From the NCBI GenBank assembly GCA_030704615.1, contig CM060732.1, positions 38,378,001-38,442,000 of the forward strand: 64,000 bases of DNA, given 5' to 3'. Positions 5,120 through 36,359 of this stretch are shown piece after piece. This DNA is from Takakia lepidozioides. Its lineage: Eukaryota > Plantae > Bryophyta. Under the pieces are notes generated by a model. That model saw only the letters and a list, made by a program, of their open reading frames with translations, had not been told where the DNA came from and searched no databases. Every line of letters starts with the position of its first letter. Position 1 is the first letter of the stretch. The position numbers were made by a program, and so were the translations under genes.

Positions 5120-6445
5120 TTATTCCCATTTAAGTTCACACATCAAATCTCCATAATCATATTGAATTTCACAAATTTCTCTATCTCCCGGCAAGTTTGG
5201 AAGGGTGAGCCATTTGCCTGTAGACAAGTCATAAAGCCTTGCAAGCTGACCAGAAGTATAACCTTCAACATTGGACGCAACTACCAACAGGAAACCTTTG
5301 CATGCGTAAAGCCTCATGAAGAAGCGTGCCCTTGATGGAGGGTCCCCGAAACCGCTACAGCTGTGATCCCTCAATTTTATCCAATTTGGTGCACCCTTTT
5401 GGCGTTGGAACTCTGTAATACAATACTCTGGTATCAAATACCCAGGGTTCTCCGTGTCCTCACGTCCCTCCTCGTGCAGGACAAACAAATGACCCTTCAC
5501 CAGTGCACAACTTTGCTTAGATGCTCCTTGTAACGGATTGTCGCTAAGCTCAAGCAGTTCTCCTTCTTGACAGTCATACGCACAAGGACCATTGCAAATC
5601 CCGTCAAGAACGTCTTCTACCATATCCCAAACGTATTGATAGCCAAAAACGAGATCCGGAGACCAGTCTGCCCTGGTCCACTCTCCAGTCCCAGAGTCGA
5701 AGAAGTCAGCTATCAGACCGCTTTCGAGTTGACCAACAACTAAGACTTTGTAGGTTTTCTTATCGTCACTCATGATGAGTTGCACCATCTCGAGCAGGAC
5801 CATGCTCATACCGTGTAGAGGAAGTGCCACCCAATCTTGTGTTAAGGGATTGCACACAAGAATGCGCACGGGATTCTTCTTCTCCCTTGATGTGCAAACG
5901 GAACACACCAACCCTCCATCACACGCACTCATTGTATCAACACGTTCATCAAGGACACCAGAATAGATTTGAAAGGCATGCCATGTGTTATGTTGGACAT
6001 CGAAGACATTAACCCAGAAGACCCCATCCACATTGTCATCTTCTGTGACGAGTGCAAACAACTTTGGATATGCATCTGCACATACCAACTTGAAGTGCGA
6101 GTTTCCTGCATTCAGGTTCCTATGCCATTCTCGCGAAAGACATCGAAGGCGATTGATTTGAGGCAATGGCAGACGTGCAAAGACAAGCCGCAACAGCTCC
6201 TCTTGCAAACCGCTCCATACAGTGGGGTCCATCGGCGCTGCATGTTCTGAACATGAATCTCCACATGTGGTTCGTCCCTCCACTGCAACTCTACTCAACC
6301 CCCTTGTTTCAGTGCAGACAAGGGTTTTGCCGCAAGGATAATCACTTTCTGAAACGACTACATGTTGTGCTGCAAATTGGAGGATTTTTCTTAACCCTGG
6401 AGCTTCTCGGGTACCTGCTATCAGATCATCAAGCATATCCCGCAA
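5120..6445 (-). CDS. F-box protein with C-terminal FBA/Kelch-like propeller region, apparently single coding exon
   Basis: 441-aa ORF with F-box signature MDPTVWSGLQEELLRLVFARLPLPQINRLRCLSREW, then SACDGGLVC...ILVCNPLTQDWVALP typical of plant F-box associated domains. True start uncertain; may be the Met of MDPTVW (~6232). Confidence 0.85.
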   Translation of the reverse strand: MRDMLDDLIAGTREAPGLRKILQFAAQHVVVSESDYPCGKTLVCTETRGLSRVAVEGRTTCGDSCSEHAAPMDPTVWSGLQEELLRLVFARLPLPQINRLRCLSREWHRNLNAGNSHFKLVCADAYPKLFALVTEDDNVDGVFWVNVFDVQHNTWHAFQIYSGVLDERVDTMSACDGGLVCSVCTSREKKNPVRILVCNPLTQDWVALPLHGMSMVLLEMVQLIMSDDKKTYKVLVVGQLESGLIADFFDSGTGEWTRADWSPDLVFGYQYVWDMVEDVLDGICNGPCAYDCQEGELLELSDNPLQGASKQSCALVKGHLFVLHEEGREDTENPGYLIPEYCITEFQRQKGAPNWIKLRDHSCSGFGDPPSRARFFMRLYACKGFLLVVASNVEGYTSGQLARLYDLSTGKWLTLPNLPGDREICEIQYDYGDLMCELKWE

Positions 6446-6971: not shown

Positions 6972-9142
6972 CACGTGGGTCAGCTGCACTAACACCGGTA
7001 ACGACTCCGTCAGCGAAGTTAACGGAGGTGTTGACGGACTCACATTGCTCCTAATTCGCACGTGCTCGTGGAATCTCTGGAGTACTCCACGACCTTCCCG
7101 TATTTACGGTATTCCCCGCGGCTACAGTAAGATAGATGAATGAAATTCGGAGTATGTGGATGGAGCCGCACATGTACGGATGATCGTACATTCATTCGTC
7201 CATCTTCATCATCCTCTTTACCTACTTTCCTACCTACCGCTCACATTCCATCCGACTTTCGCTCACTATATAGCCTTACTCCTAGTGGATGAATGCCATC
7301 TCCAGCCGGTGGATTCATCCACTCGAGATACCATACGATATATCTACAGAGGCATGTACATGTATGGTAGTGTAAGAATGTGTCAGGATCATAACGTAAG
7401 GGAAAAGTTCTCTTTCGACTTTACCCGACTTTAAGTTCATTTCAAGTACATACGAGGAAAAAAGTAACCCAGACAATAACTATGGGTGAAGATATCAATA
7501 TCGTACACAAATTTAATAAATAATAAATAGCAGATAATTTTATCCAGATATAGTATATCATGGATACGTATCAGCCATAGTACATACGTACATTCAAGTA
7601 GCTATAGCGACAAATATAGATCAACACACTTGCTCCTCACTTTGTTCACCTATCTTTTACACAGAAGGTTTATCCGTATATTTCCACCTTCTCTTTCCTC
7701 TTTTAATTTTCATTTATTTGTCTGTATTTTCAATAAAAAGGCAGCGGACGAGTCAACTTCGGAGCACAGAAACTCATCAAATATATATATATATATATAG
7801 TCGGATGAGAGTACGTTTTTCATTTAAGATTCGCGTGAATCTTAGATGTTTACTGTTTGAATTCCTTGTTTCCGAAAAGAAAGAAGAGAAAAGAAATAGT
7901 AGAGAACCTCACTCATAGCTTTTACGCATCCTTTATTTAATAAGATAAATGGAAAATAAAAACCTGAAAAAGTACTGAACTTACGTTACAGACACCACGT
8001 GTCAGAAGCTAAGCAGAAGAGTAACTTTGACGTCTACGTAGGTAGTCAGTGAAGTATACAGAAATTTAAATAGCATGAGTTACCAAATCTGATATAATAC
8101 ACCGCATTAATGGATGAGCGATTAGGATGAACAAATGTCAGAGCGGATGACCTCCGTGATTGGAGGAGGCCGTCTAATATTAGGTCGTGTAAAAATAACG
8201 ATAAGCAGGCACGACAAAGCGACGGATGTCGATCGCACCACGTGGCGGCAGCCCACCCGAGTTGTGCCGGCACATGAAAGCAATGTGGGCGGCCGCCACG
8301 TGGTGAGAATCCCCATGCGGTATAGCCACGTTCTGCAACTGGCAGGGCAGTATTGCCATTATTTTAGGACAGGGAATTTGAGCTCAATTTCTCCGGGCAG
8401 CCGCGAGAACTCTCTGCATTTAACTCCTCAAATCAGACAAAATCTTTACTATATTTATTTTCTTATCCGACTGACTAATGGGTTCCAAGGTTCCAAGCCC
8501 CTTTAACGCTAAGTATAACTCCTTCGAGAACATGGTGGACCCGACCCACGATTTGTTCCCTGCATCGCGGGAAACATATCGTTGCATAACTTTAATATTT
8601 TCCACATCTCCTTTCGAAGTCGGCGCCGGCACAAATACTTTGAAATGGTCGCAGAAACTAAGAAATAATACACAATAACTTAGAAATATCTGCAAATATT
8701 TCTGGGTCAAAACTAAAACGAGTTCCCATGGAAACAAAAAAAGACCTCTGACCCGGCATAATAGCGGGTACATCGTAATAGCCGCCCAGGGAAACAGGCC
8801 CGTGGTTATGACCGTCGGGGATGCGTGACACGTGGGCATCCGACGGGGGCGGTGGGGCAGGTGTTAGTTACCGGCATACTTACCCTAATCGGAACTAGTT
8901 AGTTCCACGATAACCTTAATCAGTTTAGTTAGCGGCATTGGCAGCGGGTGGCAGATAGTTAGTGAGTGGGTAGTGGGTTAGTGACACACTACCCCACTAG
9001 GTCGGTAGAGGTTAGTAATATGTGGTTACTAGTAACTAGTAACTAGTCAGGAAGAGGGAGGCTTTGTCTCTCTCGCAGGAGGGAGAGGGAGGCAGGACGG
9101 GCAGCGCGAAGAGAGGGGGTGGAGGGGCATGCAAAGCACGTG
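6972..9142. promoter_or_regulatory. G-box (CACGTG) cluster in the divergent F-box/TIFY intergenic region
   Basis: CACGTG at 6972, 7059, 7996, 8239, 8297, 8829 and 9137, plus CACGTT at 8327. G-boxes are the bHLH/MYC and bZIP sites known from JAZ promoters. Confidence 0.6.
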
Positions 9143-9719
9143 CGCGTAATGGCTCATCTTCCTGCAGCTTGTGCAGCTTGTAAAGTCTAGAGAGTGAGCT
9201 GCGAAACTTGGTCTGCGGCTTCGCTGCATGTTTTTTGACAATATTCAAGGTCTCTAGAGCAGCAGTAAGCATGCAGAGGTGATAAGAAAGGTGGAGAGAG
9301 AGAGAATTGCGTCCGGCACACACTTGCTTGGTCTCTCATCTGTGCTGCATTACACCCTTACCTATTATACCCGTTGGTGTCTGTCTGTCTGTCTGTCTGT
9401 CTGTCGGTGTTGTTCAATCTGTGAACCACCTCAGCTTCTTGCCGAAATCTTCGGTTGCACTCTTGCTCCCATTAGGTCTGTTTCTGTGTCCCCGACATCG
9501 GCTCTAGGTATCCTGCTGGGAGTTTGGAGATCGATTGGAGCTGGGGTCTGTCTGTCGCTCTTTTCATCAAGGCTTGGGGTCACTCTAGCATCTAATCCGT
9601 CAGTTGAATCATTGTGGGACTCGCCTTTTTGAGCAACTCTTTTGTAGAGTTACGTAACTGTGTGGTTGGAAGAGAGTGGGCACGAGCGAACTGGGTGAGA
9701 CGGCTCCCCTAGAGCTACT

Positions 9720-12700
9720 ATGGCTAGAGAGCCGGTGGTAGCAATGGATTTTCTGGGCCTTGGCAAAAGCCTGGTTGATAGAGAGACGGACATTAGTATG
9801 GAGGCCGAGAGATGCAAACTGGTGAAGCCGATCCCAAGCATACCTGAGAAGCTGGGTTTGGGAGCCATGTCGAGGAGCGTGCACCTTTCGGAGAGCGAGA
9901 GAGCTAGTGAGAGAGAGAGCTCCATCTCTCGGCTGCGGCAAGGTATTTTGGAAACCTGTTTTATTCCTGCAACAGCGTTAGGATTTGTCAGCACGAGCCA
10001 TTTTAGTGTAGCTTCTCTGGACTGGTTTACTGTACCAGGTTTCTCCAAGTTTCATACCAGGGTTGTCTACAGCTACCTGCTGTGAACTGAAACTACTCCA
10101 GTGGCTTTTGTGAAAGGGTTTTATTAGGTTCTTTTTGGACTCTGGGAGCCTTCTCGCACCTGTCTTGGGACAGAAACTTGACGAGATCCTACATCTGTAG
10201 CTTCAGTTGTGTGATCCCTGGTTGAGCTGTTCTACTGTAAGGTTGGTCCTTGCAGTCCCGGTCTTCTGGGATGAAGATGAAGATTGCAACCGGGTCTATG
10301 GAGTTTAGGGAGTCGACTGGTTTTATGTGGGAGTGCACGTATGTGCATCCGTGTGAGGGTCCTTGACGGTAGTCTTTGGACCTTAGCATCTCACTAAGTC
10401 TATTTCTGCAGGTGTTTTGCCCTCCCTGTCAGGAAAGGCATGGGGAGGAAGAGATGAGGAGATGGAGGGTGGGGTGACCACAAAAAGTTCAGAGAAACCT
10501 TCTCTTGAGAAACCCTTGGAAGAGCTCACAGATGCAGATATAATGCAGCTCACCAGGGAGGATTGCCGCCGCTACTTGAAAGAGAAAGGTGCCCAGATTG
10601 CCTTGCTTACCTTGATTGTGATGTGCTTCTTGTAAGTCTCCTTGATCTGACACTAGCCTCACCAGACCAGGGGGAGGCTGGGTGAAAGATGGATCAGTGG
10701 AGCTCTATAAGCAATTGGGTCTTTAGTATCTTGAAAGTCGGGGTGGACAGGGTGACTCTTAGAGTGAACTCCTTTTGACCCTTACTGGGTTTTATGTTTT
10801 AGCAGGCTTTGCGTCCTTATTCTTGTTGGCTGAAATAGTTTATTTGTCTTCCCCTGTGTGTTGCTCAAGGTATCTGAATCTGTGCCAGCTTAATGTGGCG
10901 AGCATTCTCTCCTAATTGAATTCATTTGAGAAATGGCACATTGCACTGAGTAGGATGTTCTGAGGTCTTGAGGGTGTTGAGAGAGAGAAGAGGGCATCTA
11001 AGTCGCGACACCCTTTGAAGTATGTTGACCTCTCCTTTGACTCCCCCATGTGGACAAGTCTCACTTTGTGTTAATGGTTCCTGGACAGGTATGCAGCGTC
11101 CCCCATGGAACAAGCAGCAGGCCATCCAGCAAGTTTTCTCCCTTAGAGGTCTTTCTGACCCCCGAAGTGAAGAAATGAAGGTTGCTGGCAAAGCTGGAGG
11201 ATTGTCTCCCAAAAGAGAGTCTAACGAGGCACCCATGCATATGAACTCTCCATCCTTGTCTGCTTGGGAGCATCCTACTGCCAGTCCTGCTACTGCTGCC
11301 GTAAGTTGTGGCTTGTTTTTTTTTTTTTTTTTTTTTTCCGTTTGCACCGCTATTTACAGAGTTGACGTTCAAATTTAGGTGGACGATAATGGGTTGTGTA
11401 TTGTTATGTTTCCCCCATTTGCTGTTGAAGTTTATGTATGTTTTCTATGCTCTCCTTTGCTCCATGCATTGGTTGGCCCACAAAACTTATCAACAGATGC
11501 ACACTGCTTTGTATTCACTTCAAGTATCTTGGCTGATTCCAAGCAGGTGTCAAAAGATGGCCGGCCTAGCCATGAGTGGATTCATGAAGCAGCACAAGCC
11601 AATTTCAAGGCTTTGTATGCAAATGGCTTTCAGGCACCAAAGATGGTGCAAAACTCTGCCTCCCAGCCCTCTACTTTCATGGTAGATGCACAAGGAGGTG
11701 CCCATCCCTCAGAACGCACGGGTCCAGATTCCCACCTTTCTCTCACTATCCCTTCAACACAGCAAAATCCACCTTCCGCAGCCCAGGGGGCTGGATTTGG
11801 CTCCCCTGTACCCATTCTACCTACCGACTAGGAAAGGGATTTTCAGCGCCAGAAGTAGGGCAACCCATGGCTGGCCAGCGACTTCCTCAAATTCAACATC
11901 CTGCTCAAAATGGCAACCCACAAGGCACTATGTTACCCAGGTAGACTTCTGCACTCCTTCTGAAATTTGTTGTTTCTCTACTGTGTGATAACTTTTCACT
12001 GATTTGAGCTGCAATTCATGAATTCCCAATTTCGAGCAGGGTTCATAAGAAGGTGCTCTTTTCCCTAGCTGTTTTCCGCTGGGATGTAAACATTTGTCTG
12101 TTGGATGGAACAGACATGCTCAGGCTGGTGCAGTCGGCAAGCGACCCACAGCGCAGCTCACAATCTTCTATTCAGGCATGGTCAATGTATATGACGACAT
12201 TCCTATTGACAAGGTGAGGACTATGGTACTTCTTGGTGTGTATGAACAGATTTGAAACTCTGGAGGACATGCATCCATTGATGTTCTGCTCTTGGGAAAG
12301 ACGTACATTTCTGTGTCCTGTGGTTTCTCTGTGCCCTTTGAGTAAATAATCGTGAGGAGTCATGGCAAAGGTTTGATTTTTTGTATCTTATCTTCTGCAG
12401 GCCCAAGCAATCATGCTTTTGGCTGGTAGTGGAAGCTCCTGGTCTTCCAGCTACATGAATCCCCCTTCAAGTGGTGTATCCCGTCCAGTTTCTGCCCCCT
12501 TGGCAGTGCCCTCATCAAGTGCTGCTCCAGTCACTACTGCTGCACAAACTGGCAATACACCATTGGCTGGCCCCGCACCCCCTCTCATACCAGCAATAGT
12601 TGTCAATGCCCTTCGACAGCCAGTGGCCAGAAATCTTCTGACTGGTGAGCTTCCCCATCTCTTTGCCTTCAGAGTGCACTTTGTTGAGCACAAATAGCAT

Positions 12701-13536
12701 TTCCAGCAAGAGGTGGGAGGATTCAGCATGTCTGTTTTCAGTACATCTCTGATTCATTACCCTTCTTGTATGCCAGAGTTGCATCTTGACTACAATGCAC
12801 AACATAGATTGCCATGCATGGCTTGTGTGGAGTGGGACCAGGTGCTGATGGTTGTTGTCTGTTCTGTGCATCAACAGAGCTACCACAGGCAAGGAAGGCA
12901 TCTTTGGCTCGGTTTTTGGAGAAACGGAAAGACAGGTATAGGAACACTTGCAAGTACTGGGAAGAATGTAGATTCTGTTTTTTCATGTGCATTTCTTAGC
13001 TTGTTTTTTTCCTTGAATTCTGATATGTCGATGTATTTCTTCTTACCTCCTTATGACTACTTGCTATCTGTGCCTTCGCTGATGTTTGGAACCTGACAAG
13101 TTCTTGGTGGACCTCAATTTCCAGGGTCCGAGGAAAGGCACCCTACCCTTTTATCAAGAAAGAGGGCTCCACCACCACACCCCGTGACAAGTCCCCAAGC
13201 CCTCCTCGCACTACGACACCCACACGGTCTCCATCACCATCACGCACCCAAGGATCCCAGCAACAGCAATTTTCCTCTCCTACCCGAGGACATCAACCAT
13301 GCACATCAAGTGGCAGTGAGCCCAATTCGCCAACAAGACCTCCGCGTACCCCTCCACTCAAAAGCATTTCTGAAGAGAAATCTGCTGCGACGGTTGGTGG
13401 GAGGGATTTTGAGAGGGAGAGGGGCCATGCCTCTATGGACCAGAGATCTAGATCTCCTTCCACAATGTCTCCCCGAGAAGACCGGACTGAGGCAATGGAT
13501 GAAGATCCAGCAACCTCACCCATACGGACAAGATAA
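9720..13536 (+). CDS. TIFY-family repressor: N-terminal DFLGL motif + PPD domain + TIFY/ZIM + canonical Jas motif + Ser/Pro-rich tail (PEAPOD/JAZ-like)
   Basis: In-phase GT-AG exons: 9720-9942 (MAREPVVAMDFLGLG), 10412-10588 (LEKPLEELTDADIMQLTREDCRRYLKEK), 11089-11300 (GMQRPPWNKQQAIQQV), ~11547-11940 (internal splicing ambiguous), 12114-12213 (AQLTIFYSGMVNVYDDIPIDK), 12401-12644 (AQAIMLLAG), 12878-12935 (ELPQARKASLARFLEKRKDR), 13125-13536 (VRGKAPYP...stop). Confidence 0.9.
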
Positions 13537-14101
13537 CAGTGACTAACAGTTGGATCGGATGGGTTGGGGTGTACTTATCAAGTTTAGTCTTATTAAATTG
13601 ACATACACATACCTGTAAATATCCTTGCTGAGCCAACTGGATGGCCAAGCACAGAGGGAGGGTGCCAATGACTTTCTGAAAGGCAACTGGCCTCTTGCAT
13701 ACTGTAGATTAGAACCTGTTGATGACACCAGCTTTCTAGGTATGGATGCTGTTTGGAAACAGTAACAGAATTCTTGAACAATAAAGACATGTAGGGCCAA
13801 AACCGAACTAGGATGGAGAAGTATTGTGGTTTTTGAAGGTGAATTACCATTGAACTCACTTAACGAGTGAATGAGTTGCACCATTGCAACTCGATTTTGA
13901 ACTTAGGATTGTCATGACTTGTCAAGTCTACGTTGTTTTATTTGACTTCACTTCTCACTTCACCCTAAAGCTGCTCACTCTCGAAGCTGCTCGACAAGCT
14001 TTCTCCATTCTAGTTGGACCCATGGGAGGAAAAACAAAGCATCTCTCCCTCTCCTGTTCCCGTGAACCCAAAGGAAGACCTGGCTTGAGATTGGTATTCC
14101 G

Positions 14102-14601: not shown

Positions 14602-16210
14602 TACAAGTAGATTGTGATAACTCATGCCGTCATCCCCAAATTAAACCACACGAGGAGAAGACAAACAAATCCTGGGGCGATCTCTTCGCAGCTGCTGCAA
14701 CTTGTGAGACACTGGGTCCTCATTGACCCAGCCTGCTTACAGATAACCACCATGTGCCACCAGAATCACGCTGCCACTGCTTCTTGAATCTTGTCCATAC
14801 AAAGTCTTGCTTGGGGGGGGGGTGCAAATGATAACTCGTGCTGACGGGCCCACACCCTACTCCACATGGCCTATTCCTCCCAACATCTTCCAAAGCACGC
14901 CACAGGACTCACCAAGCACGCCACACCCTGTCGGGAAGACGAAGACGACGATGAAGCCCACCGAAGCACGTTCCCTTTGCTTCAAACTTCAAAGCGGGCC
15001 TCTAACTGCATCCCACATCGACACACAAATCTACGGGTATTTCTTACACAAAAGTACGGGTATATTATACCCACATATGTATGTACCTATTTTCTATATC
15101 ATACATACGTCATCGATGATCGTGATATACAGTAGGCTTACGTAAAAAAACCACGTGCGTCCACTTTTGGAAAAGTCACAAAAGTGGGCCAAAAGGAAGT
15201 CTGGTTGAGGGAAAAAGTAACTCTGGTTAGCTACAGGCTTTTTTGTCCAAATATCTACCCGTAAATTTTCTGGCGGTGAATCCGGAGTTACCGTCCACCC
15301 CATTTCAGATATCCCGTGTTATCTACGCTCCTGACATCAAAGTCGGCTCTCCTTTCTTTCGTTAGCATGGATGAATGAAGCGAAGATGGATTGGAGTAAG
15401 GATGGATGAATAGTGCTGATAATGCAAAAGGGCTTCTGTCTCATGCAAGCGAGTGGGATAAATGTACAGTGAATAATATCTCGCCGCGTAGCTGTGCACG
15501 TGCTGGAATATATGTATGAGATAAAGTATTTGGAATGTATACGCTTTTGTGTACGTATGTAGATACTTAGGTACCTAGTAGGCTTAGGTCAAACACGTGT
15601 TAAACGTCCAACTAGAATATTGTGCCAGTCTTATTTTTCCTTTTTGTTTTTAAAATAAAACAAATGCATGCCATTCATACAAGCCCTGCCCTCCAGTAAT
15701 TATGAATAGATCGTAAAAATATGCAAGATCACACAGTGTTTATTAATAAATATCACGGTAACAGGATTTGAGCCCTGAATCACCCGCTGGCAGGCAGGGT
15801 AATATCCTCATAAGCATGCACAAGAAGTTGAACTCCAAACCTACAGACCATGACATTGTTCATCCACGGCATGTCATTCATTACAAATATAAACAGAATA
15901 TTCTGGTGGGCACTGTATCGATCGAATTGGAAGAGTAAATCGAAGAAAAATAAATAAAAAAATGTGTAAAGCGTCAAAAGCGGGGCTGAACCCATTACGT
16001 AGTTATGCCTTGAGAAGGCAAGGCCGATAAAAGGCACATCGCAGTTCAGCTGGTAAGTGCACAATGTGTCGCCTTGGTGGTTCGGGGTTCAAACCTGCTT
16101 CCCTGCCCTGTGCCGTTGCCTGTTCGTGGATGTTGTTCGTCCTGTGTGCCTCCGTGGCCCATAAATGAAAGGGTTTTTTTTTTTTCTAAAATAAAAAATA
16201 ACAGGGGGAT

Positions 16211-18167: not shown

Positions 18168-21100
18168 CTAATCAACTTGAACATCATCATCCGGAGTCTT
18201 TTCATCCTCATCAAGCTGCAAGTCTTCTTGGTCATCGAAGTCATCGTCATAAATGGCCCGGCCCTCAAAAGACACCTCCGAATCATCCTCCACCTCGTTG
18301 TCAATGGCCGTGTCTTCGTCTCCTTCTCCAACATCCGTATCTTCTAGAGCTTCATCATATAGGGTCCAGGATGCATTGTCCGGGGCGTCATCATTATCTT
18401 TTACCCCCTCTACCCAACCTCCATCATCAGCATCATTATGACTAGTCTCTTCGTCCACCGCAATTGCCTCACCCCATGGAGATCCGAGACCATGATAGAT
18501 ACGTCTTCCTCTTGGCTGAGCATGCACAACCACCTTCCAATTCCCCCCTCTTGTTTTGTCATCAGAGAAGAAAACTTGCTCCATGTCTGAAGGCCGTGAA
18601 TAAGGCTCATCGGAGGGACGATGAGTAGGGTTGAGCCTATCTGCATTGACGCGCATGAAACCACAATCATCTTGCACTAGTGTTGCGGAGGGCCCCACAA
18701 GATATGGCTGGAACCACCTTCCCTTGAAGAGAAGAGGCCGGTACCTTGTATACTAAAGTTGGAGTATGCTCTCAAGCTCTCCAATGTACTCAAGTTTGCT
18801 CATAGCAGGTCGTGTATCTCCCTTGCATGCCCCACATGGAGTCTTGCCAATATGTGGCACACAACCAGAATCAAAGGTTGTTTTGCGCTTCATGTCAAGA
18901 GCACGAATGCGGAAATGACGACCGTGAACCCAAACCGCCGTGTATGAGGTCACGAATTGAGATGGGCCCCTTGCAATGTCTTGCACCAAATCTGAAACTA
19001 CCTCTCCTTGAGCAACGGCGTCATAAACTGAAGTTCGAATCCACTGTTGGAATGAACTTAGAGGCTACAATTCCATGGGCAAATTTTGTGAAGGAACATT
19101 CCGGCGGCCCGCTCCTCGTCGTAGGCGTCTAGTAACCGGCCTTGGATGGTTCCGCCTCCATGCAAGCATCTCCTCCTCTCGTTTCTGAACAAGATTATTG
19201 TATCTTGTCTCCCACTCATGTATGGATGGGGTGTTCTTCAGTATGAAGTCATGCGCATGCTCAATCACCAAGGTCGGCAATTTTACCCTCTTTGATTTTT
19301 TGGGCAAAACGATGTCATTGGTTCGTGCAACCTCCTCTTCCTTCCACATCCGAGGGGCTTCCTCATCCACCCTTGCCATGTACTCCGTGCAATAGAACAT
19401 AGCTTCTTGCAACGTATACCCCTCCGTCATGCTACCCTCCGGGTGCGCCATTTGTCTTACAAATCCTTTCAAATTCTTCATATAACGCTCAAGGAAGTAC
19501 ATCCACCGAGAATGAACGGGGCCGGCAATCGAAGCCTCTTCCACTAAGTGCACTTGGATGTCAAAGAAGGAGGGAGGTGCATTTCCAACATATACATTAC
19601 CTCTGACGCCTCCTTCTTCATGCGTGGAAAATCTGCTTCTTCCAACTCTTTGGAGCAAATCCACCGGAACAAGCCTCCCAATCTATAGATTGTCTCACAA
19701 ACCTCGGGAGTCAATGTCCCACGTACTGCAATGGGCAAGATGTCTTGCAATAGATTGTGGTAGTCATGAGACTTCAAACCATGGCCCCCGTCTTCTTCGC
19801 TAAACTTCGTACGGAGAGATGACCCATAACCAGTTGGTGTTCGGACAGCACTTATGGTGGTTATCACTTTCTTGTATTCCTCCTTTGTCCATTGCCAAGG
19901 TGCGCGCCTATACTTCCACCGTAAAACACCCTTTGGGTCCACACCATTTTGTTCCGCCCATAGATGGCGCATGCGACCCTGCTCCTCAAGCTCCTTTCTA
20001 ACACCGAGAGAATCTCCTTTTGCAGCCACTCCCTTCTTTGCCGGCGTGCCATGAAGAACCCGAAAAAGGGACGAGCAGACATTTTTCTCAATATGCATAG
20101 GATCTAGAAGATGGCGAATCTTCAGGTCCTACATATATCCCCACCCACAAAGACTTACACAAAAAAATTTACGTGAAAGTGACAATGCAACACATACCAA
20201 ATGTGCAATATTACATGCATGCATAGGGATATTGACGGTCTTTTTGTGGAATATGTACCGCCCAATATGGCAACTCGTAAAAGATTGAAAGTCGTTTCAT
20301 GCCGGGCACGTCCGTTTCACCGACCGTGCCCACATGGGCCTCCTTCCATCGATCCTCCCAAAACTGCCCGGACGGTGTCATAGGGGGGGGACGTACTTCC
20401 TCTTTGCCATCAAACAAGTTTTTTTCTCTTCTTCTCCATCGATGGCTCATAGGAAAAAAATTTGCGGTAGTTGGGATACACCATCTTGTGAAGATGGCGG
20501 GAGCTATGTGCATCAAGATCATCGCCACAATGCAAGCATGCATGGTACCCTTTGGTGCTTAGCCCCGAGCAAACAGTTAGTCATGTACTACACATCCCAC
20601 CACATTAGCAAAAACAAAAAGTTGTCATGTGCATGGCCCATAATGTCATCTACCCCACTACGGTGCACAAGACTGTCGCTGCTACTTCAATCAATCCCAA
20701 TCCTCATCGATATTATCCGGCATTGACAAGTGAATGTACGCAGGTTGTTCATGGGGAACATAATATACCTGGATAATCATGCATTGTCCAAAGCAAGATG
20801 TCTCTCATCTGAAAAGGGTCAAGTGAAGCATCCAATGTCGAGACCCCCCTCCATAGCTCATTAAGTTCATCAACAAGAGGTCGCAAGTACGTGTCCATGT
20901 TTGCCACTTGTTTGTTCTCTATGAGACATTCATATCATTGTTTCAATGCTCCACCAATATGCAAATTATACTACAAAATGAATTACACGTCTTACTCCAT
21001 GATTATGTCACTCATCAATCTTGCATCCGAATTGCGTCAGAGATCAGAAGTTTAATGTAAAGTCTAAGGCAATAATGAACATGAAATGAGTACACTCACC

Positions 21101-22394
21101 TGGCACAATGGCAGCCAACATGATATGGCCTTTTTTAATTGAAAGATACGGAGGGATGTTGTAATTCACCATGGTCACCGGCCAAGTGGAATGACTACAT
21201 GACTGGACAGAGAATGGGTTGACCCCATCCGAGGAGAAGCCGAGGTGGACATGTCGTGGCAAATGCCACATCTCTTCAATATGCTTCCATGCTTGTGAAT
21301 CTTGTGGCCCGCACAACTTTTATCCGGGGGGCTCCGATGCGAGGCGTGCCATCTCATGAGTCTGGCCAATTCGGGGCTTCGGTACTGTGCCCTCAATTGC
21401 GGGATGATCGGAAAGTAATGCATTTTCTAGGATGAAATACCCCACACCCCCCACATGTAATCATCCCATTAGCACACATAATACAACACCCTTATGTCTT
21501 TCCCTTTATGCAGACTCTCCTTCATTTGGGTGTGAATGGTCAAACCAAACGTCGCTCCTTCCACTCCTCACTCACTCCTTCCAAAACCACAATCAGATCT
21601 TGCATGAGTACTACTCTCTAAACCCTAAACTTTGTGGAATACACTTTACATACATTGAAAAGATTAAATAAAGTAATCTCCCATGCGAGGGGGAATGGCG
21701 CTTAAACCTTGCGTGGTACTTTTTTCCCTTGGACATCATCCCGATATCGATCTTTCTTGCACTTTGGGCGCTTGCTGAGATGCGAATCCTCTCCGTAGTA
21801 TAGGGTTTTATCACATGGACATGCATGAAAAATCTTATAGCCCATCCCCACAGAGTCCAAGACTTCGCGCGCCTCTTTCCGCGACCGTGGCATCTTGGGT
21901 TTCAAGTGTGGAGCAAGGATATAGTCTGCAATAGTTTGCATTATGGCAGACATCCCAACATTACTTATGCCAAATCGAATTTGAAGATTGAGCAAAAGTA
22001 AGATTGTTGAAAGTCGACTCACTTTCGCCCCTTCGTACAAGGGAGTTCTCGCCTCCCTCTCCATGTCATTTGAGGGGGCCATTTCAGGATCATCGATTGG
22101 CCGGGTTCCCTCTTCATGGGATGCATCAGCGCCCACATGATGCATTAAGAGATCCTCCATGGCTTGCACATCCTCCTGGTTAATTCCATGCTCATTGTTG
22201 TTGTCACTGTCACTATCAGTGTCATCGTCATCATCGTCCGGTACCGTGGGGGCGGCGTCTCGCCCACAGCTCCCGCCTGATGTACTTGGGTTGTTTTCGG
22301 ATGGGGTGCCAAGAGAAAAGACCGGGAAGGGATGGACAAAGTCCTGATACGAACAAATGAACATAGGAACATATATTATAATGTGTCCTTGCAA
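18168..22394 (-). pseudogene. CACTA TnpD/Tnp2 transposase (Transposase_21, DUF4218, DUF4216-type regions), intron-containing and frameshifted
   Basis: Motifs in order: HACPCD...KCKKDRY; HYFPIIPQL...LMRWH; DSQAWKH...SDGVNPF...STWPV..NYNIPP; MHIEKNV; LKSHDYH; GPVHSRWMYFLERYMKNLK...PEGSM; EPY...EQVFF...WKVV; acidic tail. Confidence 0.92.
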
Positions 22395-23422: not shown

Positions 23423-25070
23423 TCACTCACGCTGTAATCGGAGGTCCCAATCATCCCGGGAGAACTCGTATGATGCAAATAGTTCGCTGCCAGCCCTAAC
23501 AGTCCTACTAGCACATGTCATCACAAACATGTGCATCCCCTTACAGTATACTGACATATGACCACAAAAGCTCTCATGCCCATCGCTTTGCTCGTTACAT
23601 TTGTTCTCCTAGGATGACCAAAAGAACTATTGACCAGCCCAGCAACATTGCCGAAGATGTCGGGGTCACCATCACAAAATCTGATCTCAATGGGAGACAA
23701 CCCCCGTCTACGTACATCATGTCCGTTGACACACAAAATGTAGGGTAGGATGTATGGGGCTTCGAGGCGTAATGTACGGAACTCCGCAGAGGTGTAATAT
23801 GGACCGTAGTAGGGAAACAAGTCCACCATGCTGTTTCTCCGAGGAGGAACCACAATATCATTGACCGTGAATAAACCCTGACCCATAGCAGGGTCTGTAG
23901 CGGCTCTCACAACATACTGTCTCCCCCAATACTTGAACTCCACATTTTCTCGAATAGGGGTGGGAGGGTCGAGATGATTCCCCCAACAACGAGGCTGGAC
24001 GGTCCTCAGTAACATAGTCATATGCGCTTCCCATTGGGGGTGAGGATCCGGCTCAGGCCGCCCAAGCCGAATGGGAGGAAACCTAGGGCGAAGCCGACCC
24101 CTCCTAGGGGTTCGAGGGGCACATGCACGTGGAGGTGGAGGTGGAGGTGGTACTGCTGGCGGAGGAGATGAAAGTGGAGGTGGTTGAGGATGTAATGTCG
24201 GAGGTGCAGCCAGGGGTACAACGTCCGGATCAGGTACTACCGGAGGTGGATCAAGCATAGAAACAGACGGGGGGGGGGGGGGGGGAGGCCACAATCAGGG
24301 GGACCGCCTGAGGAAACTGGAGGGGGAGGTGGGCCTGCTCGTCGTCGGCCATAACGCCTACGACACCTACGATACCCCTCGACCCTACGCATCTCATCTA
24401 CGTGCTGCTGGGGGAACGAACTGGTCACATCGGGCACATGCTCTGGCACAAATTCTGCAAGTAGACCGGCGCGAAATGCCTCCTGTGCAATGTGATTGCG
24501 AGCTTGGGCATCAAGTCGTGGCTGCAATGTGCGTAGTGAACGACGCATCGATACTTATGTCGTAATTTTGATTCATGTATGCTTACCAATCATACTATAT
24601 TATTAGATAAACCTAAATGTACCTTAAATGAATGTTTATGAGAGGGATGGGAAAAACACTCACCTTTGCCGCATCCGCAATCTTGTTCTTCTTGTAATGT
24701 TTTTCGACAACATGCGGTCGCCGCCTCGGTGGTCTGGTGGCGCCCGGCGGTATCCGTTCCCAACACTTAGTGCACCAAAACTCAATCCTGTCGGGGGGGG
24801 GGGGGGGGGGTCAAAGATGGACGTGGTTGGACGGGGTGGCCCGCGAGGGGGCAACCCGCGGCGCGCCCAACTCGATCCTGGAGTGTCAACATCCTCCGCA
24901 TCACCTGAAATTTGGCCTCGGTCCCTTCTACGATTGTGTCCAACAGCCTGTATTGGATCAGGTGCAATGGGTGGCTCCTCGCCACAAAAAATGATTGCTC
25001 TAGGGCCACAATCGATATGTGGTACTACCTCCCCATCCTCGAGGGAGACGGGTCGATGTTCCCTCACCAT
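23423..25070 (-). pseudogene. Pro-rich protein with C-terminal SET (lysine methyltransferase-like) domain, inside the CACTA element
   Basis: GQGLFTVNDI...PYYGP...YILC...DGD...GNVAGLVNSS...NV, then after one frameshift (~23598) HMFVMTCASRTVRAGSELFASY; stop at 23423-25. These match the SET motifs GxGLF, NxS and GxELxxxY. Splice donor at 24663. Confidence 0.75.
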
Positions 25071-30224: not shown

Positions 30225-33200
30225 CACTAGAAGAGAAACCGGCTTTTTCCACGGCTCTGCCATCTCACACCTGGCACATTCCACGGCTTTTATCATGGGT
30301 CTGTAGACTGAGCCAAGGTGTGGGTCTAAATATGCCCTAACTGTGGGGTGTCTCACATGTGGTCCACACCCCAGGCAAGAACGGTGTGAAAACAGCCATG
30401 ACCGTGGCAGGGGTTGGCTTAGTTTACATGGCATGTTACACACCTGTGTGAAATGGGACCATACAATTATTTCCACTGATTGTGGTGTATGGGTTTAGTT
30501 AGTACTCCGCTGCAAATGGAATAAATCATGAACTTCAGAAATCTGCCCTCGGAAAGACGAAGAGGTGGTCGTCGCATTTTGCAATGTAAACCGAATGCAA
30601 TGCAAGCTTAACAGTCCTCATATTATGATTGAAGGGAGTCAAATTAAGTGTGACCATATCAGTGCAGGGACATAAATATGAATCATTCAACATTGTAAAA
30701 TGAAAACAAGGTAGAGCTAGTACATGGTACCTTTAAACTTGCTGCAGAGTGCAAAAGGTTTAAAGATCAAAGTGCAAAAGGTTTAAATTTTTTTGCAAAA
30801 GTTGCTTGTAGGGTTTGCAAAAGGTTAATTTTTTTAAAAAGTTGCCCATCCCGGTAGCTGTGAACAGAGGGTTGGGACTTAGAGCGCGCGAGCAGGAGGG
30901 AGAGAGAGAGGGCTGGGACTTAGAGCAGCGAGTGGGAGGGAGGGCAAACATGGGAGGCCCGCAGTTGGAGCAACCTTCGCATCTAAAAAGCAAGCAACCC
31001 GACAAACGCTAGGGTATGTGTGCGAGGACTAGGTGTCGGCTGAGAGCTCGCCGTTCTGGGGAGAGTCAGCTTGGTCTTAGGTCGAGGACAATGTGGTGAG
31101 GGCACCTTCTTCTTCGACCTATTTCAGCCTGTTTTGCGCTCTCATCAAACTCAGCCTTAAATTTGTAGCACGGAGCAGAGCTGGCATGAGTTTTTAAAGA
31201 TTATTCACGATGGGACAACCGCAATCGCAAGGTGTGGCTTTTTCTTAATGTACGATGTAAAGAAGTTTGTCCATCCTGCAAATGTCCTGTTAGTACCGTG
31301 CTTTGGTATCCTTCCTGATGTTTACAAGGTTCTTGGAAGAGTCAGCTTGGTCTTAGCAGGCCGTGCTTCAATTTCTGCCCGTTCAGCTGCACCATGGTGG
31401 TTCTCATAGACCAATCAGACATTACTTGACTACAGACACAAGCAGCACACACAAGAGGTTCTCTTAGGTTCATGGTCAGTCAAATCCTCCATGGGTCATG
31501 ACACAAGGTCGAGGACAATGTGGTGAGGGCACCTTCTTCTTTGACCTATTTCAGCCTGTTTTTCCCTCCCATCAGACTCGGTTGATAGAACTAGGCAGCG
31601 GTAACGGAGGCACCTTCTTCAATACATTTCAGCCTGTTTTCCTTGTTATCAGAGTTGTCCCTAATTTTCATGTTGAATTCTGCAAGTTAGCTCTTGGTGG
31701 ATCTATGGTACAGGGGGTTTTGAAGTGATTTGACATGTTACTGCCTATGTAGCAACAGGAAAGTATTGAAAACAGATAACAGAAACTAAGAGAAGCTCTG
31801 GAATGAAGGAGCAGGGATAGAGTGTGGGTTGAGATTCATCGAAGCGGGTCGGATTTCAAGCTCCAAATCACCTATGATTCCCTGTGGAAGGATAGCTACA
31901 AGAAACCTGCATGGGTAGATGGTCAATTGGAAGCCGCGGCAGCAACGGCACAAATGATCAAATCAGGCACCTCAACCATGACCACAACTCTGGAAGAGGA
32001 TCAAGAGAGGGAGTCCACAGTGCCTGTTCTGGCACTCCTGGGCATGTCAAGATGCTTTGTGAGGTAGGTAGACTGAATGAGGCTCTACAGACTTTAAACC
32101 AATGAGGAATTTCAGCAAATTTAGATAAGTATGTCTGTCTCTTGCTTAAGTGCATCAAGAGGAAAGGTTTGGAAGCTGGAAAGCAGGTGCACACTCACAT
32201 TATGATCCAAAGTGGACTCACGCCAACTGTTTTTCTCCTCAACACCCTTGTCAACCTGTATGTTAAGTGCGGGAGCATCATGATGCTCACCAAGTTTTCA
32301 ACAGAATGCCTCAACGATATTTGATCTCATGGAATACAATGCTGGAAGGATTTACCACGCGTTGGTGTTTGTGTTTGCAAAAGCGTGTGCAAGCGTGGGA
32401 CCTCTGGAAAATGGGGGAAAGGGGGCACCTTCTTCAATAGCACAACGGCTACAAGTGGGTAGATGGTCAATTGGAAACAGCAGCGGCAGCAACACATTGA
32501 TAGAACAAGGCACTAGCTAGGATCGATAGCTACAAGAAACCTGCATGGGTAGATGGTCAACTAAAGGCAGCAGCTGCAATGTCACAGTTGATAAAATCAA
32601 GCACCTCAACCAAGACCACAGCCTCTGGAAGAGGATCAAGAGAGGGAGTCCACAAGCCTCTTCTGGCACTTCTGGGCATGTGAAGATGTCTTGTGAGGCA
32701 CGCAGACTGAAAGAGGCTCTACAGACTTTAATTTAAACCAAAGAGGCATTTCAGCAGATTCAGAAACGCATGTCTGTCTCTTGCATAAGTGCATCAAGGT
32801 GAAAGCCTGGAAGTTGGAAAGCAGGTGCACACTCACATTATCCAAAGTGGATTCACGCCAAATGTTTTTCTCCTCCACACCCTTGTCAACATGCATGTTA
32901 AGTGCGGGAGCATCATGGATGCTCACCAAGTGTTCAACAGAATGCCTCAACGATATTTGATCACGTGGACTATCATGTTGGCAGGATTTACCAAGCATGG
33001 GTGTGGTAGGAATGTTTTGGAGACCTATGAGCAAATGATGGGGGAAGCGATTTAGCCCAACCACATCACGTTTGTAGCGTTTGTAGTGTGCGTGCAAGCC
33101 TGGCAGCCCTGGAAAAAGGCAAAGAGGTGCATGGTGACATCGTGAGATCTGGAATCCTACCAGATGTCATCCTGAATACTGCCCTGGTGGACATGTATGC

Positions 33201-36200: not shown

Positions 36201-36359
36201 CCGTGGACTTTTCCACAGGGCCACCCGAGAGCCAGGCCGTCCACGGGGTGTCCGAAAGCACTAGTCGTTTCTTACACCCACGACAGGTGTGGATTGCGAC
36301 TGATTCCAGAGCAAAAAGTGTGGAAAAAGCCGTGGAAAAAGCCGGTTTCTCTTCTAGTG
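30225..36359. mobile_element. Pack-CACTA: non-autonomous CACTA carrying host gene fragments
   Basis: Perfect ~30-bp TIRs CACTAGAAGAGAAACCGGCTTTTTCCACGG / CCGTGGAAAAAGCCGGTTTCTCTTCTAGTG. 3-bp TSD TAT (30222-24, 36360-62). CCACG/CGTGG subterminal repeats. No transposase. Confidence 0.93.
31822..35190 (+). pseudogene. Captured, internally duplicated PDF-motif + PLS-class PPR gene fragments
   Basis: Repeated NTLVDMYAKCGSIEHAKGVFNNMAERDVVLWSAMIAGYAQQG and GVKPNHITFVC with stops and frameshifts. SDFKLQITYDSLW...PAWV at 31849, PDFKLHITCDSLW...PPWV at 34842, WNEYFSDPSQWWDNRGK at 34584 and 35137 followed by GT donors. Confidence 0.88.

What the first reader, a model, noticed from the sequence alone, without database searches (positions are those of the whole stretch)
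9720..13536. Hybrid PEAPOD/JAZ protein: PPD domain together with an intact jasmonate degron
Seen: N-terminal MDFLGL, a complete PPD domain, TIFY and the Jas motif ELPQARKASLARFLEKRKDRVRGKAPY in one gene model. Established: DFLGL and LPQARKASL are hallmarks of JAZ3/4/9-type JAZ proteins; angiosperm PPDs have a divergent Jas motif without the COI1 degron and are turned over by SCF-SAP; PPDs are mainly described from vascular plants. Inference: an ancestral-state or chimeric repressor that could place a PPD/KIX growth module under COI1-oxylipin control, and a possible intermediate in the origin of PPDs from JAZ.
Basis: partly seen in the sequence, partly recalled or inferred. Interest (0 to 1): 0.8.

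Follow-up and report, generated by a model that had tools for sequence, protein, structure and literature searches.

The report
Moss JAZ repressor with PEAPOD domain
An expressed moss-type gene encodes a jasmonate-pathway repressor, the counterpart of Marchantia's single JAZ, that still carries a complete PEAPOD growth-regulator domain; this looks like the undivided ancestral form of two families that are separate in flowering plants, and the copy in this assembly has a 2-base frameshift.

Summary
Spliced transcript contigs from two studies chain the eight exons, in two overlapping contigs and not in one molecule. The PEAPOD (PPD) domain is complete. The 27-residue Jas motif is identical to that of MpJAZ, including the ELPQ loop reported to specify dn-OPDA.

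The gene is not a chimera. The closest full-length relatives are the two Sphagnum proteins published in 2022 as "putative PPD orthologues". They have the same N-terminal DFLGL box, PPD, TIFY and full-Jas order, and so does a Diphasiastrum (lycophyte) protein. Fern PPDs have lost the LPQA loop, and seed-plant PPDs have lost the PY as well. The Marchantia "putative PPD" of that paper falls in the same 90%-identity cluster as MpJAZ.

DFLGL and LPQARK are general features of bryophyte JAZ proteins, not marks of the JAZ3/4/9 group.

Caveat: exon 4 of the window carries a net +2 bases relative to both transcripts. [quoted passage not shown]

The scan already reported a paralogue 775 kb away (s1-493572). 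COI1 and KIX binding remain untested.

The parts
6972..9142 (.). Cluster of seven CACGTG G-boxes (6972, 7059, 7996, 8239, 8297, 8829, 9137) in the spacer shared with the divergent F-box gene; candidate MYC/bHLH sites
   Evidence: One search gives the positions; 7 seen against 0.5-0.7 expected in 3274 bp, Poisson P about 1e-6 to 1e-5. Function is inferred only.
9376..9719 (+). 5' UTR (minimum extent; both transcript contigs end about 24 nt upstream of 9400, at the (GTCT)n run)
   Evidence: contigs cover 9400-9940 with 24 further letters beyond 9400. One search shows the microsatellite.
9720..9942 (+). Exon 1: start codon and the conserved N-terminal box MAREPVVAMDFLGLGKSL..LVKPIPSIPE..RESSISRLRQ
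   Evidence: It aligns to Marchantia OAE22702.1 (59% identity), Sphagnum, Diphasiastrum and fern PPDs.
10412..10588 (+). Exon 2: first half of the PPD domain (coding 10504-10587, LEKPLEELTDADIMQLTREDCRRYLKEK)
   Evidence: 57 bits, HMM positions 1-28; joints.
11089..11300 (+). Exon 3: second half of the PPD domain (11091-11159, MQRPPWNKQQAIQQVFSLRGLSD) followed by a linker
   Evidence: 35 bits, HMM positions 30-52. The split codon GGT gives the G between the two halves.
11547..11940 (+). Exon 4: linker with the conserved SHLSLTIPS and GFGSPVP boxes; a single exon in the transcripts
   Evidence: contiguous in both contigs; relatives align in frame 0 up to about 11819 and in frame 2 from 11837.
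11816..11831 (+). Frameshift site. The window reads CATTCTACCTACCGAC and both transcripts read CATGTTCTACCGAC (net +2 in the window). The window frame then ends at TAG 11829-11831.
   Evidence: (tables 3 and 4).
12114..12213 (+). Exon 5: TIFY/ZIM domain core (12148-12213, TAQLTIFYSGMVNVYDDIPIDK)
   Evidence: (PF06200, E=2.4e-10).
12401..12644 (+). Exon 6: end of the TIFY domain (AQAIMLLAGSG) and a Ser/Pro/Ala-rich linker
12645..12877 (+). Intron 6. It is retained in one low-depth contig of X1; read-through would end the protein (..LLTGELPHLFAFRVHFVEHK*) before the Jas motif.
   Evidence: record 3, 12615-12906, depth 24 against about 180.
12878..12935 (+). Exon 7: N-terminal 20 residues of the Jas motif, ELPQARKASLARFLEKRKDR (COI1 degron loop and helix)
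   Evidence: Identical to MpJAZ. The ELPQ loop and dn-OPDA specificity: PMC9894187.
13125..13536 (+). Exon 8: last 7 Jas residues VRGKAPY (13126-13146), the STTTPRDKSPSPP box (13168-13206), SSGSEPNSPTRPPRTPP (13306-13356), the acidic tail EAMDEDP, and stop TAA 13534-13536
   Evidence: The motifs are shared with liverwort, moss, lycophyte and fern relatives.
13537..13900 (+). 3' UTR (minimum extent; the contig runs on beyond 13900)
   Evidence: X1 record 4 and X2 record 6.

Best explanation
This is the counterpart, in an early-diverging moss-type plant, of the main bryophyte JAZ gene (the MpJAZ lineage), in a form that keeps an intact PEAPOD domain. It is an eight-exon, expressed TIFY gene. Its product of about 605 aa has, in order: a DFLGL N-terminal box, a PPD domain, a TIFY/ZIM domain, a canonical Jas motif with the bryophyte ELPQARK degron and PY, and a Ser/Pro-rich tail. 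Shown here: the motifs, the splicing, collinear similarity to Sphagnum 04G/15G, to Diphasiastrum and to the MpJAZ locus, and the graded decay of the degron in fern and seed-plant PPDs. Inferred mechanism: like MpJAZ, it represses MYC-type bHLH factors through Jas and recruits NINJA/TOPLESS through TIFY. It would be destroyed by SCF-COI1 when dn-OPDA-type ligands clamp the ELPQ loop. A G-box cluster upstream may give MYC-driven feedback. The PPD domain adds a second docking surface, which binds KIX8/9 in Arabidopsis; its partner in mosses is unknown. PPD and JAZ would thus be two descendants of one PPD-TIFY-Jas ancestor. The copy in this assembly carries a +2 frameshift in exon 4, which is either an assembly error or a null allele.
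For: Motifs and frames. Spliced transcripts from two studies. PPD specificity of exon 2. Collinear tblastn of Sphagnum fallax BDL97_04G081500 on all eight exons, mean identity 51% and the best of 308 proteins. The same architecture in Sphagnum 04G/15G and Diphasiastrum 03G135200, with a degenerate PPD in Riccia and Calypogeia, and 53 bits for the first PPD half in Marchantia OAE22702.1. OAE22702.1 and Mp6g06230 (MpJAZ) fall in one 90% cluster; Mp6g06230 is MpJAZ. The Jas motif is 27/27 identical to MpJAZ. The E and Q of ELPQ are required for dn-OPDA recognition, and MpJAZ without Jas does not bind MpCOI1: PMC9894187. Shared intron positions (inside PPD after K.KG, after TIFY ..DK, and the Jas split 20+7) in Marchantia. 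Quick tree: one moss clade at 99, with the Sphagnum PPD-type pair sister to the PPD-less long JAZs; liverwort and vascular-PPD clades are separated from TIFY6-type JAZ by a branch at 98. Related moss long JAZs (CpJAZ1/3) are induced by OPDA/dn-OPDA and bind MYC2: PMC8201998. G-box enrichment.
Against: No binding or degradation data exist for this protein. No single contig spans PPD to Jas; the chain rests on a 117-nt overlap between contigs from two runs. The runs are only guessed to be RNA, although six GT..AG joints argue for it. The window's own exon 4 is out of frame, so the reference individual may not make the full protein. The tree is unrooted, is the quick version only, includes the PPD columns, lacks short moss JAZs and an outgroup, and does not contain the window's protein. 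Whether mosses have KIX8/9 or SAP was not examined. The Bryopsida relatives have lost both PPD and PY, so the domain is dispensable in most mosses.
Confidence: 0.75

Rival explanations
1. The window's copy is a real null or decaying allele. In the sequenced individual the frameshift at 11816-11820 truncates the product to about 298 aa (DFLGL box and PPD only, no TIFY or Jas). The intact transcripts come from other accessions, and the paralogue 775 kb away covers the function.
For:: both transcript sets differ from the window by the same complex change (2 bases fewer at one spot, 4 more at another). That is unlike a simple homopolymer error. Five further coding differences are all nonsynonymous (my reading). 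At 13177 and 11760 the transcripts carry the residue conserved in relatives and the window does not.
Against: With 0.3-0.5% divergence also seen in intron 2, five nonsynonymous changes out of five is not significant. UTRs and six of the eight exons are identical to the transcripts.
Confidence: 0.35
2. It is a chimera or artefact: two neighbouring genes (a PPD gene and a JAZ gene) wrongly joined, or a recent lineage-specific exon-shuffling fusion.
For: No single contig covers PPD through Jas. The reading frame breaks between the two halves of the gene in the window.
Against: X1 contig 1 already joins PPD to TIFY and exon 6. X2 contig 6 joins exon 6 to Jas and the tail. The same collinear architecture is annotated independently in Sphagnum fallax and S. 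magellanicum, in Diphasiastrum, and (degenerate) in Riccia, Calypogeia and Marchantia. Intron positions are shared with Marchantia.
Confidence: 0.03
3. It works as a PEAPOD-type growth regulator outside oxylipin control. The Jas motif would serve only for transcription-factor binding or nuclear import, with turnover by another ligase (SAP-like), as in angiosperm PPDs.
For: The PPD domain scores higher against the vascular PPD profile (57+35 bits) than the Sphagnum ones do (81 and 72 bits). Selaginella PPD complements the Arabidopsis ppd mutant (PMC8836299).
Against: All 27 Jas residues are identical to MpJAZ, whose Jas is needed for MpCOI1/dn-OPDA binding. Such conservation of the loop residues E, L, P, Q, A, R, K is hard to explain without COI1. 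PPDs that escaped COI1 (ferns, seed plants) lost exactly this loop.
Confidence: 0.1

Closest known systems
MpJAZ (Marchantia polymorpha Mp6g06230 / Mapoly0097s0021), the single liverwort JAZ and dn-OPDA co-receptor with MpCOI1
   Same: Identical 27-residue Jas motif (ELPQARKASLARFLEKRKDRVRGKAPY). The same TIFY core, the GFGSP box, the TPPR(D/E)KSPSP and SSGSE.SSP boxes and the acidic ..EAMDE.. tail. The same intron positions. The long model OAE22702.1 also shares the MARE..DFLGLGKSL N-terminus (59% identity to exon 1).
   Different: In Marchantia only the first PPD half is recognisable (53 bits) and the second half is degenerate. The standard 459-aa MpJAZ model starts at the Met inside that region and lacks the N-terminus. 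The window's PPD domain is complete.
Sphagnum fallax/magellanicum 04G081500/083800 and 15G007200/006400, the 'putative PPD orthologues' of PMC8836299
   Same: The same five-part architecture, including the full ELPQARK..PY Jas. Closest full-length relatives by tblastn on all exons.
   Different: Only about 51% mean identity, so a different moss lineage. The paper treats their C-terminal motif as a truncated 'Jas*' and does not mention the degron or a link to JAZ.
Arabidopsis PPD1/PPD2 (TIFY4A/4B) and other seed-plant PPDs
   Same: PPD domain (exon 2 part 74-90% identical to Amborella and Ginkgo) and TIFY domain. Jas helix core RKAS.QR(F/Y)LEKRKDR.
   Different: Seed-plant PPDs have the PPD domain at the very N-terminus with no DFLGL box. 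They have E(G/V)P.SRK in place of ELPQARK and a basic tail in place of PY. They are known to bind KIX8/9 and to be turned over by SCF-SAP (from the literature, not tested here).
Arabidopsis JAZ3/4/9-type (TIFY6) JAZ proteins
   Same: DF(L/M)GL N-terminal box, TIFY, and (V)PQARKASLARFLEKRKER..PY Jas.
   Different: No PPD domain. V/A in place of E in the loop, which goes with JA-Ile and not dn-OPDA (PMC9894187). Separated from the bryophyte and PPD groups by a branch at 98 in the quick tree.
Bryopsida 'long' JAZs: Calohypnum CpJAZ1/CpJAZ3, Pohlia, Ceratodon, Physcomitrium
   Same: The same moss clade (support 99). The same N-terminal box (MAREPVAVDYMGVG), TIFY, ELPQARKASLARFLEKRKDR and SPTRPP tail. 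They are OPDA/dn-OPDA-induced and bind MYC2.
   Different: No PPD hit with the HMM (the exon-2 equivalent is lost; only a WN(R/K) remnant remains). PY is replaced by VRKVPVK.
Diphasiastrum complanatum O6H91_03G135200 (lycophyte)
   Same: DFLGV box, PPD at 126 bits, TIFY, and ELPQARKASLQRFLEKRKERALANAPY.
   Different: A vascular plant; it groups with vascular PPDs in the quick tree. About 56% identity over the conserved blocks only.

Membership tests
JAZ subfamily of TIFY proteins | TIFY/ZIM domain (Pfam PF06200) | tested here: met
   exon 5, E=2.4e-10, 40 bits (cut-off 27). The domain continues as AQAIMLLAG in exon 6.
JAZ subfamily of TIFY proteins | Jas motif (PF09425) with a COI1 degron loop (LPIAR(R/K)-type; LPQARK in bryophytes), helix and C-terminal PY | tested here: met
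   Read directly: ELPQARKASLARFLEKRKDR|VRGKAPY, 27/27 identical to MpJAZ, whose motif scores 49 bits on PF09425. A Pfam scan of the window itself was not possible: the motif is split by an intron and exon 7 gives only 18 whole codons.
JAZ subfamily of TIFY proteins | Conserved 'Jas intron' splitting the motif into 20 + 7 residues (Chung et al. 2010, from memory) | tested here: met
   Joint 12935|13125 in transcripts. The split gives 20 residues (E..R) and 7 (VRGKAPY). Marchantia has the same split.
JAZ subfamily of TIFY proteins | No additional PPD or GATA domain (the filter used in PMC6829463) | tested here: not met
   A complete PPD domain is present.
JAZ subfamily of TIFY proteins | Ligand-dependent binding to COI1; binding to MYC; ligand-induced degradation | not testable with these tools
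   Inferred only, from identity with the MpJAZ Jas motif (PMC9894187) and from CpJAZ-MYC2 binding (PMC8201998).
PEAPOD (PPD, TIFY4) subfamily | PPD domain of about 50-55 residues N-terminal to TIFY | tested here: met
   Local HMM from ten fern, lycophyte and unassigned PPDs: exon 2 57 bits (positions 1-28), exon 3 35 bits (positions 30-52). Phmmer hits were nearly all PPD/TIFY4 proteins. Pfam has no PPD model.
PEAPOD (PPD, TIFY4) subfamily | TIFY domain | tested here: met
PEAPOD (PPD, TIFY4) subfamily | Divergent or truncated Jas* without the COI1 degron loop and without PY | tested here: not met
   The window has the full loop and PY. Seed-plant PPDs in the same table do not.
PEAPOD (PPD, TIFY4) subfamily | Binding of KIX8/9 through the PPD domain; turnover by SCF-SAP | not tested
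   No KIX or SAP search was made in this genome. The neighbouring F-box gene is At3g61590-like, not SAP.

The most novel reading that the evidence does not exclude
JAZ and PEAPOD are two halves of one ancestral land-plant repressor (DFLGL box, PPD, TIFY, Jas). Early-diverging mosses and Lycopodiaceae still make the undivided protein, so whatever the PPD domain docks is removed by COI1 on dn-OPDA perception. The MpJAZ locus retains a vestigial PPD half that the standard gene model cuts off. Vascular PPDs escaped COI1 stepwise: the loop was lost in ferns and the PY in seed plants. The PPD domain itself predates land plants, since it is found in a Chara braunii ENTH protein.
Probability: 0.5. Interest if true: 0.7.

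Novelty: new member of a known kind. Interest (0 to 1): 0.5.

Why it matters
Jasmonate signalling trades growth against defence. In flowering plants the PEAPOD/KIX growth module and the JAZ/COI1 hormone module sit on separate proteins. A natural protein that carries both, in a lineage where the COI1 ligand (dn-OPDA) and the degron rules are known, gives a direct test of how the two families split. It also tests whether growth repression by PPD was once hormone-gated. The comparison links two literatures that have not been joined in the papers I could search: the 'putative PPD' of Marchantia clusters with MpJAZ. Finally, it flags that the assembled copy may be a broken allele.

Tried and rejected
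1. Intron rescue of the exon-4 frame break: many GT..AG combinations restore the frame, but the transcripts show one continuous exon with 2 fewer bases.
2. Pfam gave nothing for PPD because it has no such model. Exon 7 was too short to scan.
3. SAP synteny: the upstream F-box ORF is At3g61590/HWS-like, not SAP.
4. The look-up of encoding contigs for Sphagnum P0143 found no record, so no Sphagnum locus or synteny comparison was made.
5. I therefore could not test whether the exon-4 patch is gene conversion or whether the contigs come from a near-identical copy.
6. Paper searches for MpJAZ+PPD, PEAPOD+Marchantia+JAZ, KIX8 in non-seed plants and Chara+PEAPOD found nothing on point.
7. The careful tree did not finish; the quick tree is reported.
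8. TIFY and Jas remnants in the Chara protein: none found.
9. P0039 and P0099, from the exon-2 search, are spurious.
10. Exons were searched by reference and Sphagnum P0143 served as a proxy.
Full report
OBSERVATION. The + strand between 9720 and 13536 holds an eight-exon gene. The exons are E1 9720-9942, E2 10412-10588, E3 11089-11300, E4 11547-11940, E5 12114-12213, E6 12401-12644, E7 12878-12935 and E8 13125-13536. All introns are GT..AG.

These boundaries are not guesses. Contigs of two public runs from two studies (X1 of 2017 and X2 of 2021, each holding about the exonic share of the stretch) lie on the window with exactly these joints. The runs are only guessed to be RNA, but six GT..AG joints in their contigs argue for it. 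X1 contig 1 (1692 nt) runs from the 5'UTR through E1-E6. X2 contig 6 runs from E6 (12528) through E7 into E8 and the 3'UTR. The PPD-to-Jas chain therefore rests on two contigs that overlap by 117 nt, not on one molecule.

MOTIFS.
- The product starts MAREPVVAMDFLGLGK.
- E2 ends with ..LEKPLEELTDADIMQLTREDCRRYLKEK. A split codon gives G. E3 starts MQRPPWNKQQAIQQVFSLRGL.
- A profile built from ten fern, lycophyte and unassigned PPD domains scores E2 at 57 bits (positions 1-28) and E3 at 35 bits (positions 30-52). That is a complete PPD domain, scoring above the Sphagnum ones.
- E2 alone, searched against 1.84 billion representatives, returned 119 proteins at E<=1e-3. Nearly all are PPD/TIFY4-type; the others are a Chara ENTH protein and two spurious rows.
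- E5 carries the TIFY domain (PF06200, E=2.4e-10).
- E7 and E8 give ELPQARKASLARFLEKRKDR|VRGKAPY. The intron sits at the 20+7 'Jas intron' position that I recall from Chung et al. 2010.

The window's exons sum to 1820 nt, which is not a multiple of three. In E4 both transcripts read CATGTTCTACCGAC where the window reads CATTCTACCTACCGAC, a net 2 bases fewer (tables 3 and 4). With the transcript version the frame runs on (..GFGSPVPMFYRLGKGFSAPEVGQPMAGQ.., my translation by hand), giving 605 aa. With the window version it ends ..GFGSPVPILPTD* at 11829-11831. Relatives align in frame 0 up to about 11819 and in frame 2 from 11837, so the shift is in the window.

Five more coding differences are all nonsynonymous: 11641-2 (K>R), 11724 (P>T, X1 only), 11760 (Q>E) and 13177 (T>P). 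At 13177 and 11760 the transcripts carry the residue conserved in relatives. Intron 2 shows 3 differences in 325 nt, so the runs probably come from other accessions. I could not tell an assembly error from a real null allele, because the single run search was already spent.

WHAT IT IS. The best full-length match is Sphagnum fallax BDL97_04G081500 (598 aa). It aligns collinearly to all eight exons at a mean 51% identity, ahead of its 15G paralogue. These two Sphagnum genes are the 'putative PPD orthologues' of White et al. 2022 (PMC8836299; accessions). Both have a DF(L/F)GL box, PPD (81 and 72 bits), TIFY, and ELPQARKASLARFLEKRKDR.RSKGPY.

The lycophyte Diphasiastrum O6H91_03G135200 has the same set, with PPD at 126 bits and ELPQARKASLQRFLEKRKERALANAPY. 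Fern PPDs (Ceratopteris, Adiantum, Psilotum, Pteridium) keep the PPD domain and the Jas helix, but their loop reads E(H/Q)(P/Q)P(S/H/T)RK. Some fern-type rows keep the DFLGL box and the PY; the named Ceratopteris and Adiantum rows have lost the PY. Seed-plant PPDs read E(G/V)P.SRKAS.QRYLEKRKDR followed by a basic tail, with no PY. This is a graded series from a full Jas to the 'Jas*' of the literature.

LINK TO JAZ. The window's Jas motif is 27/27 identical to that of MpJAZ (Mp6g06230). The Marchantia protein that White et al. called a putative PPD, OAE22702.1 (596 aa), sits in the same 90%-identity cluster as Mp6g06230 (459 aa).

In the Marchantia locus, a first exon (L001 6001-6417) encodes MAREAVGALDFLGLGKSL.. 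and ..LEVLTDTDVMHLSQEDCRDYLKGKG. That is the first half of a PPD domain (53 bits). An intron follows at the same place as the window's E2|E3 intron. The standard MpJAZ model begins at the next Met (MHRNTWNKP.., the degenerate second half).

Riccia and Calypogeia show the same layout with weaker PPD remnants. Bryopsida 'long JAZs' (CpJAZ1/3, Pohlia, Ceratodon, Physcomitrium) share the N-terminal box, TIFY, ELPQARK and the tail, but they have lost the first PPD half and the PY. Inagaki et al. 2021 noted a conserved N-terminal sequence of unknown meaning in these proteins. They also showed OPDA/dn-OPDA induction and MYC2 binding (PMC8201998).

A quick maximum-likelihood tree of 38 proteins was built without the window's product. 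It gives one moss clade (support 99) in which the Sphagnum PPD-type pair is sister to the PPD-less long JAZs. It also gives a liverwort clade (99) and a vascular PPD clade that includes the lycophyte (90). All of these are separated by a branch at 98 from TIFY6-type vascular JAZs. The tree is unrooted, includes the PPD columns and lacks several JAZ classes, so it supports kinship and says nothing about the order of events.

HOW IT MOST LIKELY WORKS. The architecture and its conservation are shown. The rest is inferred by homology:
- Jas binds MYC-type bHLH factors.
- TIFY recruits NINJA/TOPLESS.
- dn-OPDA-type ligands glue the ELPQ loop to COI1, which leads to ubiquitination and decay.

Monte et al. 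2022 showed that MpJAZ without Jas does not bind MpCOI1. They also showed that the E and Q of ELPQ specify dn-OPDA, and that this combination is kept in almost all bryophyte JAZ and in some lycophytes (PMC9894187).

Seven CACGTG G-boxes lie in the 3.3-kb spacer upstream, against 0.5-0.7 expected. This would fit MYC feedback, but G-boxes serve many factors. What the PPD domain binds in mosses is unknown.

COMPARISON AND NOVELTY. By the textbook definitions the protein fails one criterion of each subfamily. It is a JAZ with an extra PPD domain, and it is a PPD with a full Jas motif. It is not unusual for its lineage: Sphagnum has two such genes, and this genome has a second one 775 kb away according to an earlier report of this scan (s1-493572). 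I did not see that locus.

LPQARK is the only degron found in moss and liverwort JAZ (PMC6829463), so it is not a JAZ3/4/9 mark. Bryophyte PPD orthologues are published. What I did not find in the searchable papers is any statement that they carry the COI1 degron, or that the Marchantia one is MpJAZ. Subscription papers were not searchable. I file the gene as a new member of a known kind, with a moderately interesting evolutionary reading attached.

SIDE FINDING. The exon-2 search also hit Chara braunii GBG77822.1. This is a 714-aa intronless ORF with an N-terminal ENTH domain, a full PPD domain (aa 429-478, 101 bits) and a partial second copy. It has no TIFY or Jas. If it is genuine Chara sequence, the PPD domain is older than land plants and older than its union with TIFY.

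LIMITS.

Noticed in passing
L002:10001-12145 (Chara braunii BFEA01000278.1; protein P0004 = GBG77822.1): A streptophyte alga has a full PPD domain (aa 429-478, 101 bits on the local HMM) and a partial second copy (353-380). They sit in an intronless 714-aa ORF behind an ENTH domain, with no TIFY or Jas. No paper in the library links Chara and PEAPOD. This would make the PPD domain older than land plants.
   Followed up: partly
L001:6001-6417 and 7316 onward (Marchantia LVLJ01003083.1; P0310, P0233): The standard MpJAZ model (459 aa) starts at the Met just after the intron that splits the PPD-like region. An upstream in-frame exon encodes the DFLGL box and the first PPD half, as in OAE22702.1. 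Whether MpJAZ mRNA includes that exon was not tested.
   Followed up: partly
window 6972-9142: Seven CACGTG G-boxes lie in the 3.3-kb spacer between the F-box gene and this gene (0.5-0.7 expected). Smaller clusters lie at 15152-15599 and 35984-36121.
   Followed up: partly
window 5120-6445 (-): A single-exon 441-aa F-box protein with a kelch/beta-propeller tail, transcribed divergently from the TIFY gene. It is closest to the At3g61590 (HAWAIIAN SKIRT)-type clusters and is not SAP.
   Followed up: partly
window 12615-12906: An X1 contig retains intron 6 (depth 24 against about 180). Translation would stop before Jas, giving a PPD+TIFY protein without a degron. It may also be plain pre-mRNA; an intron-2 contig has depth 6.
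   Followed up: no
window 11641-11820 and 13177: All coding substitutions between the window and the transcripts are nonsynonymous, and most cluster in 180 bp of exon 4. Possible causes are accession divergence, a gene-conversion tract from the paralogue, or local assembly error.
   Followed up: no
window 9380-9410 and 11317-11339: A (GTCT)n microsatellite in the 5'UTR, where both transcript contigs end, and a T-run of about 23 in intron 3, where the read tool skipped a repeat.
   Followed up: no
proteins P0228/P0229 (KC19_VG327800) and P0232 (M758_UG186400): By their locus names, the Ceratodon purpureus long-JAZ relatives lie on the V and U sex chromosomes.
   Followed up: no
window 18168-22394 (-): A run of long ORFs that look like transposon (CACTA-type) proteins downstream of the gene. 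Earlier notes of the scan place CACTA elements at 23423-25070 and 30225-36359. Not examined here.
   Followed up: no
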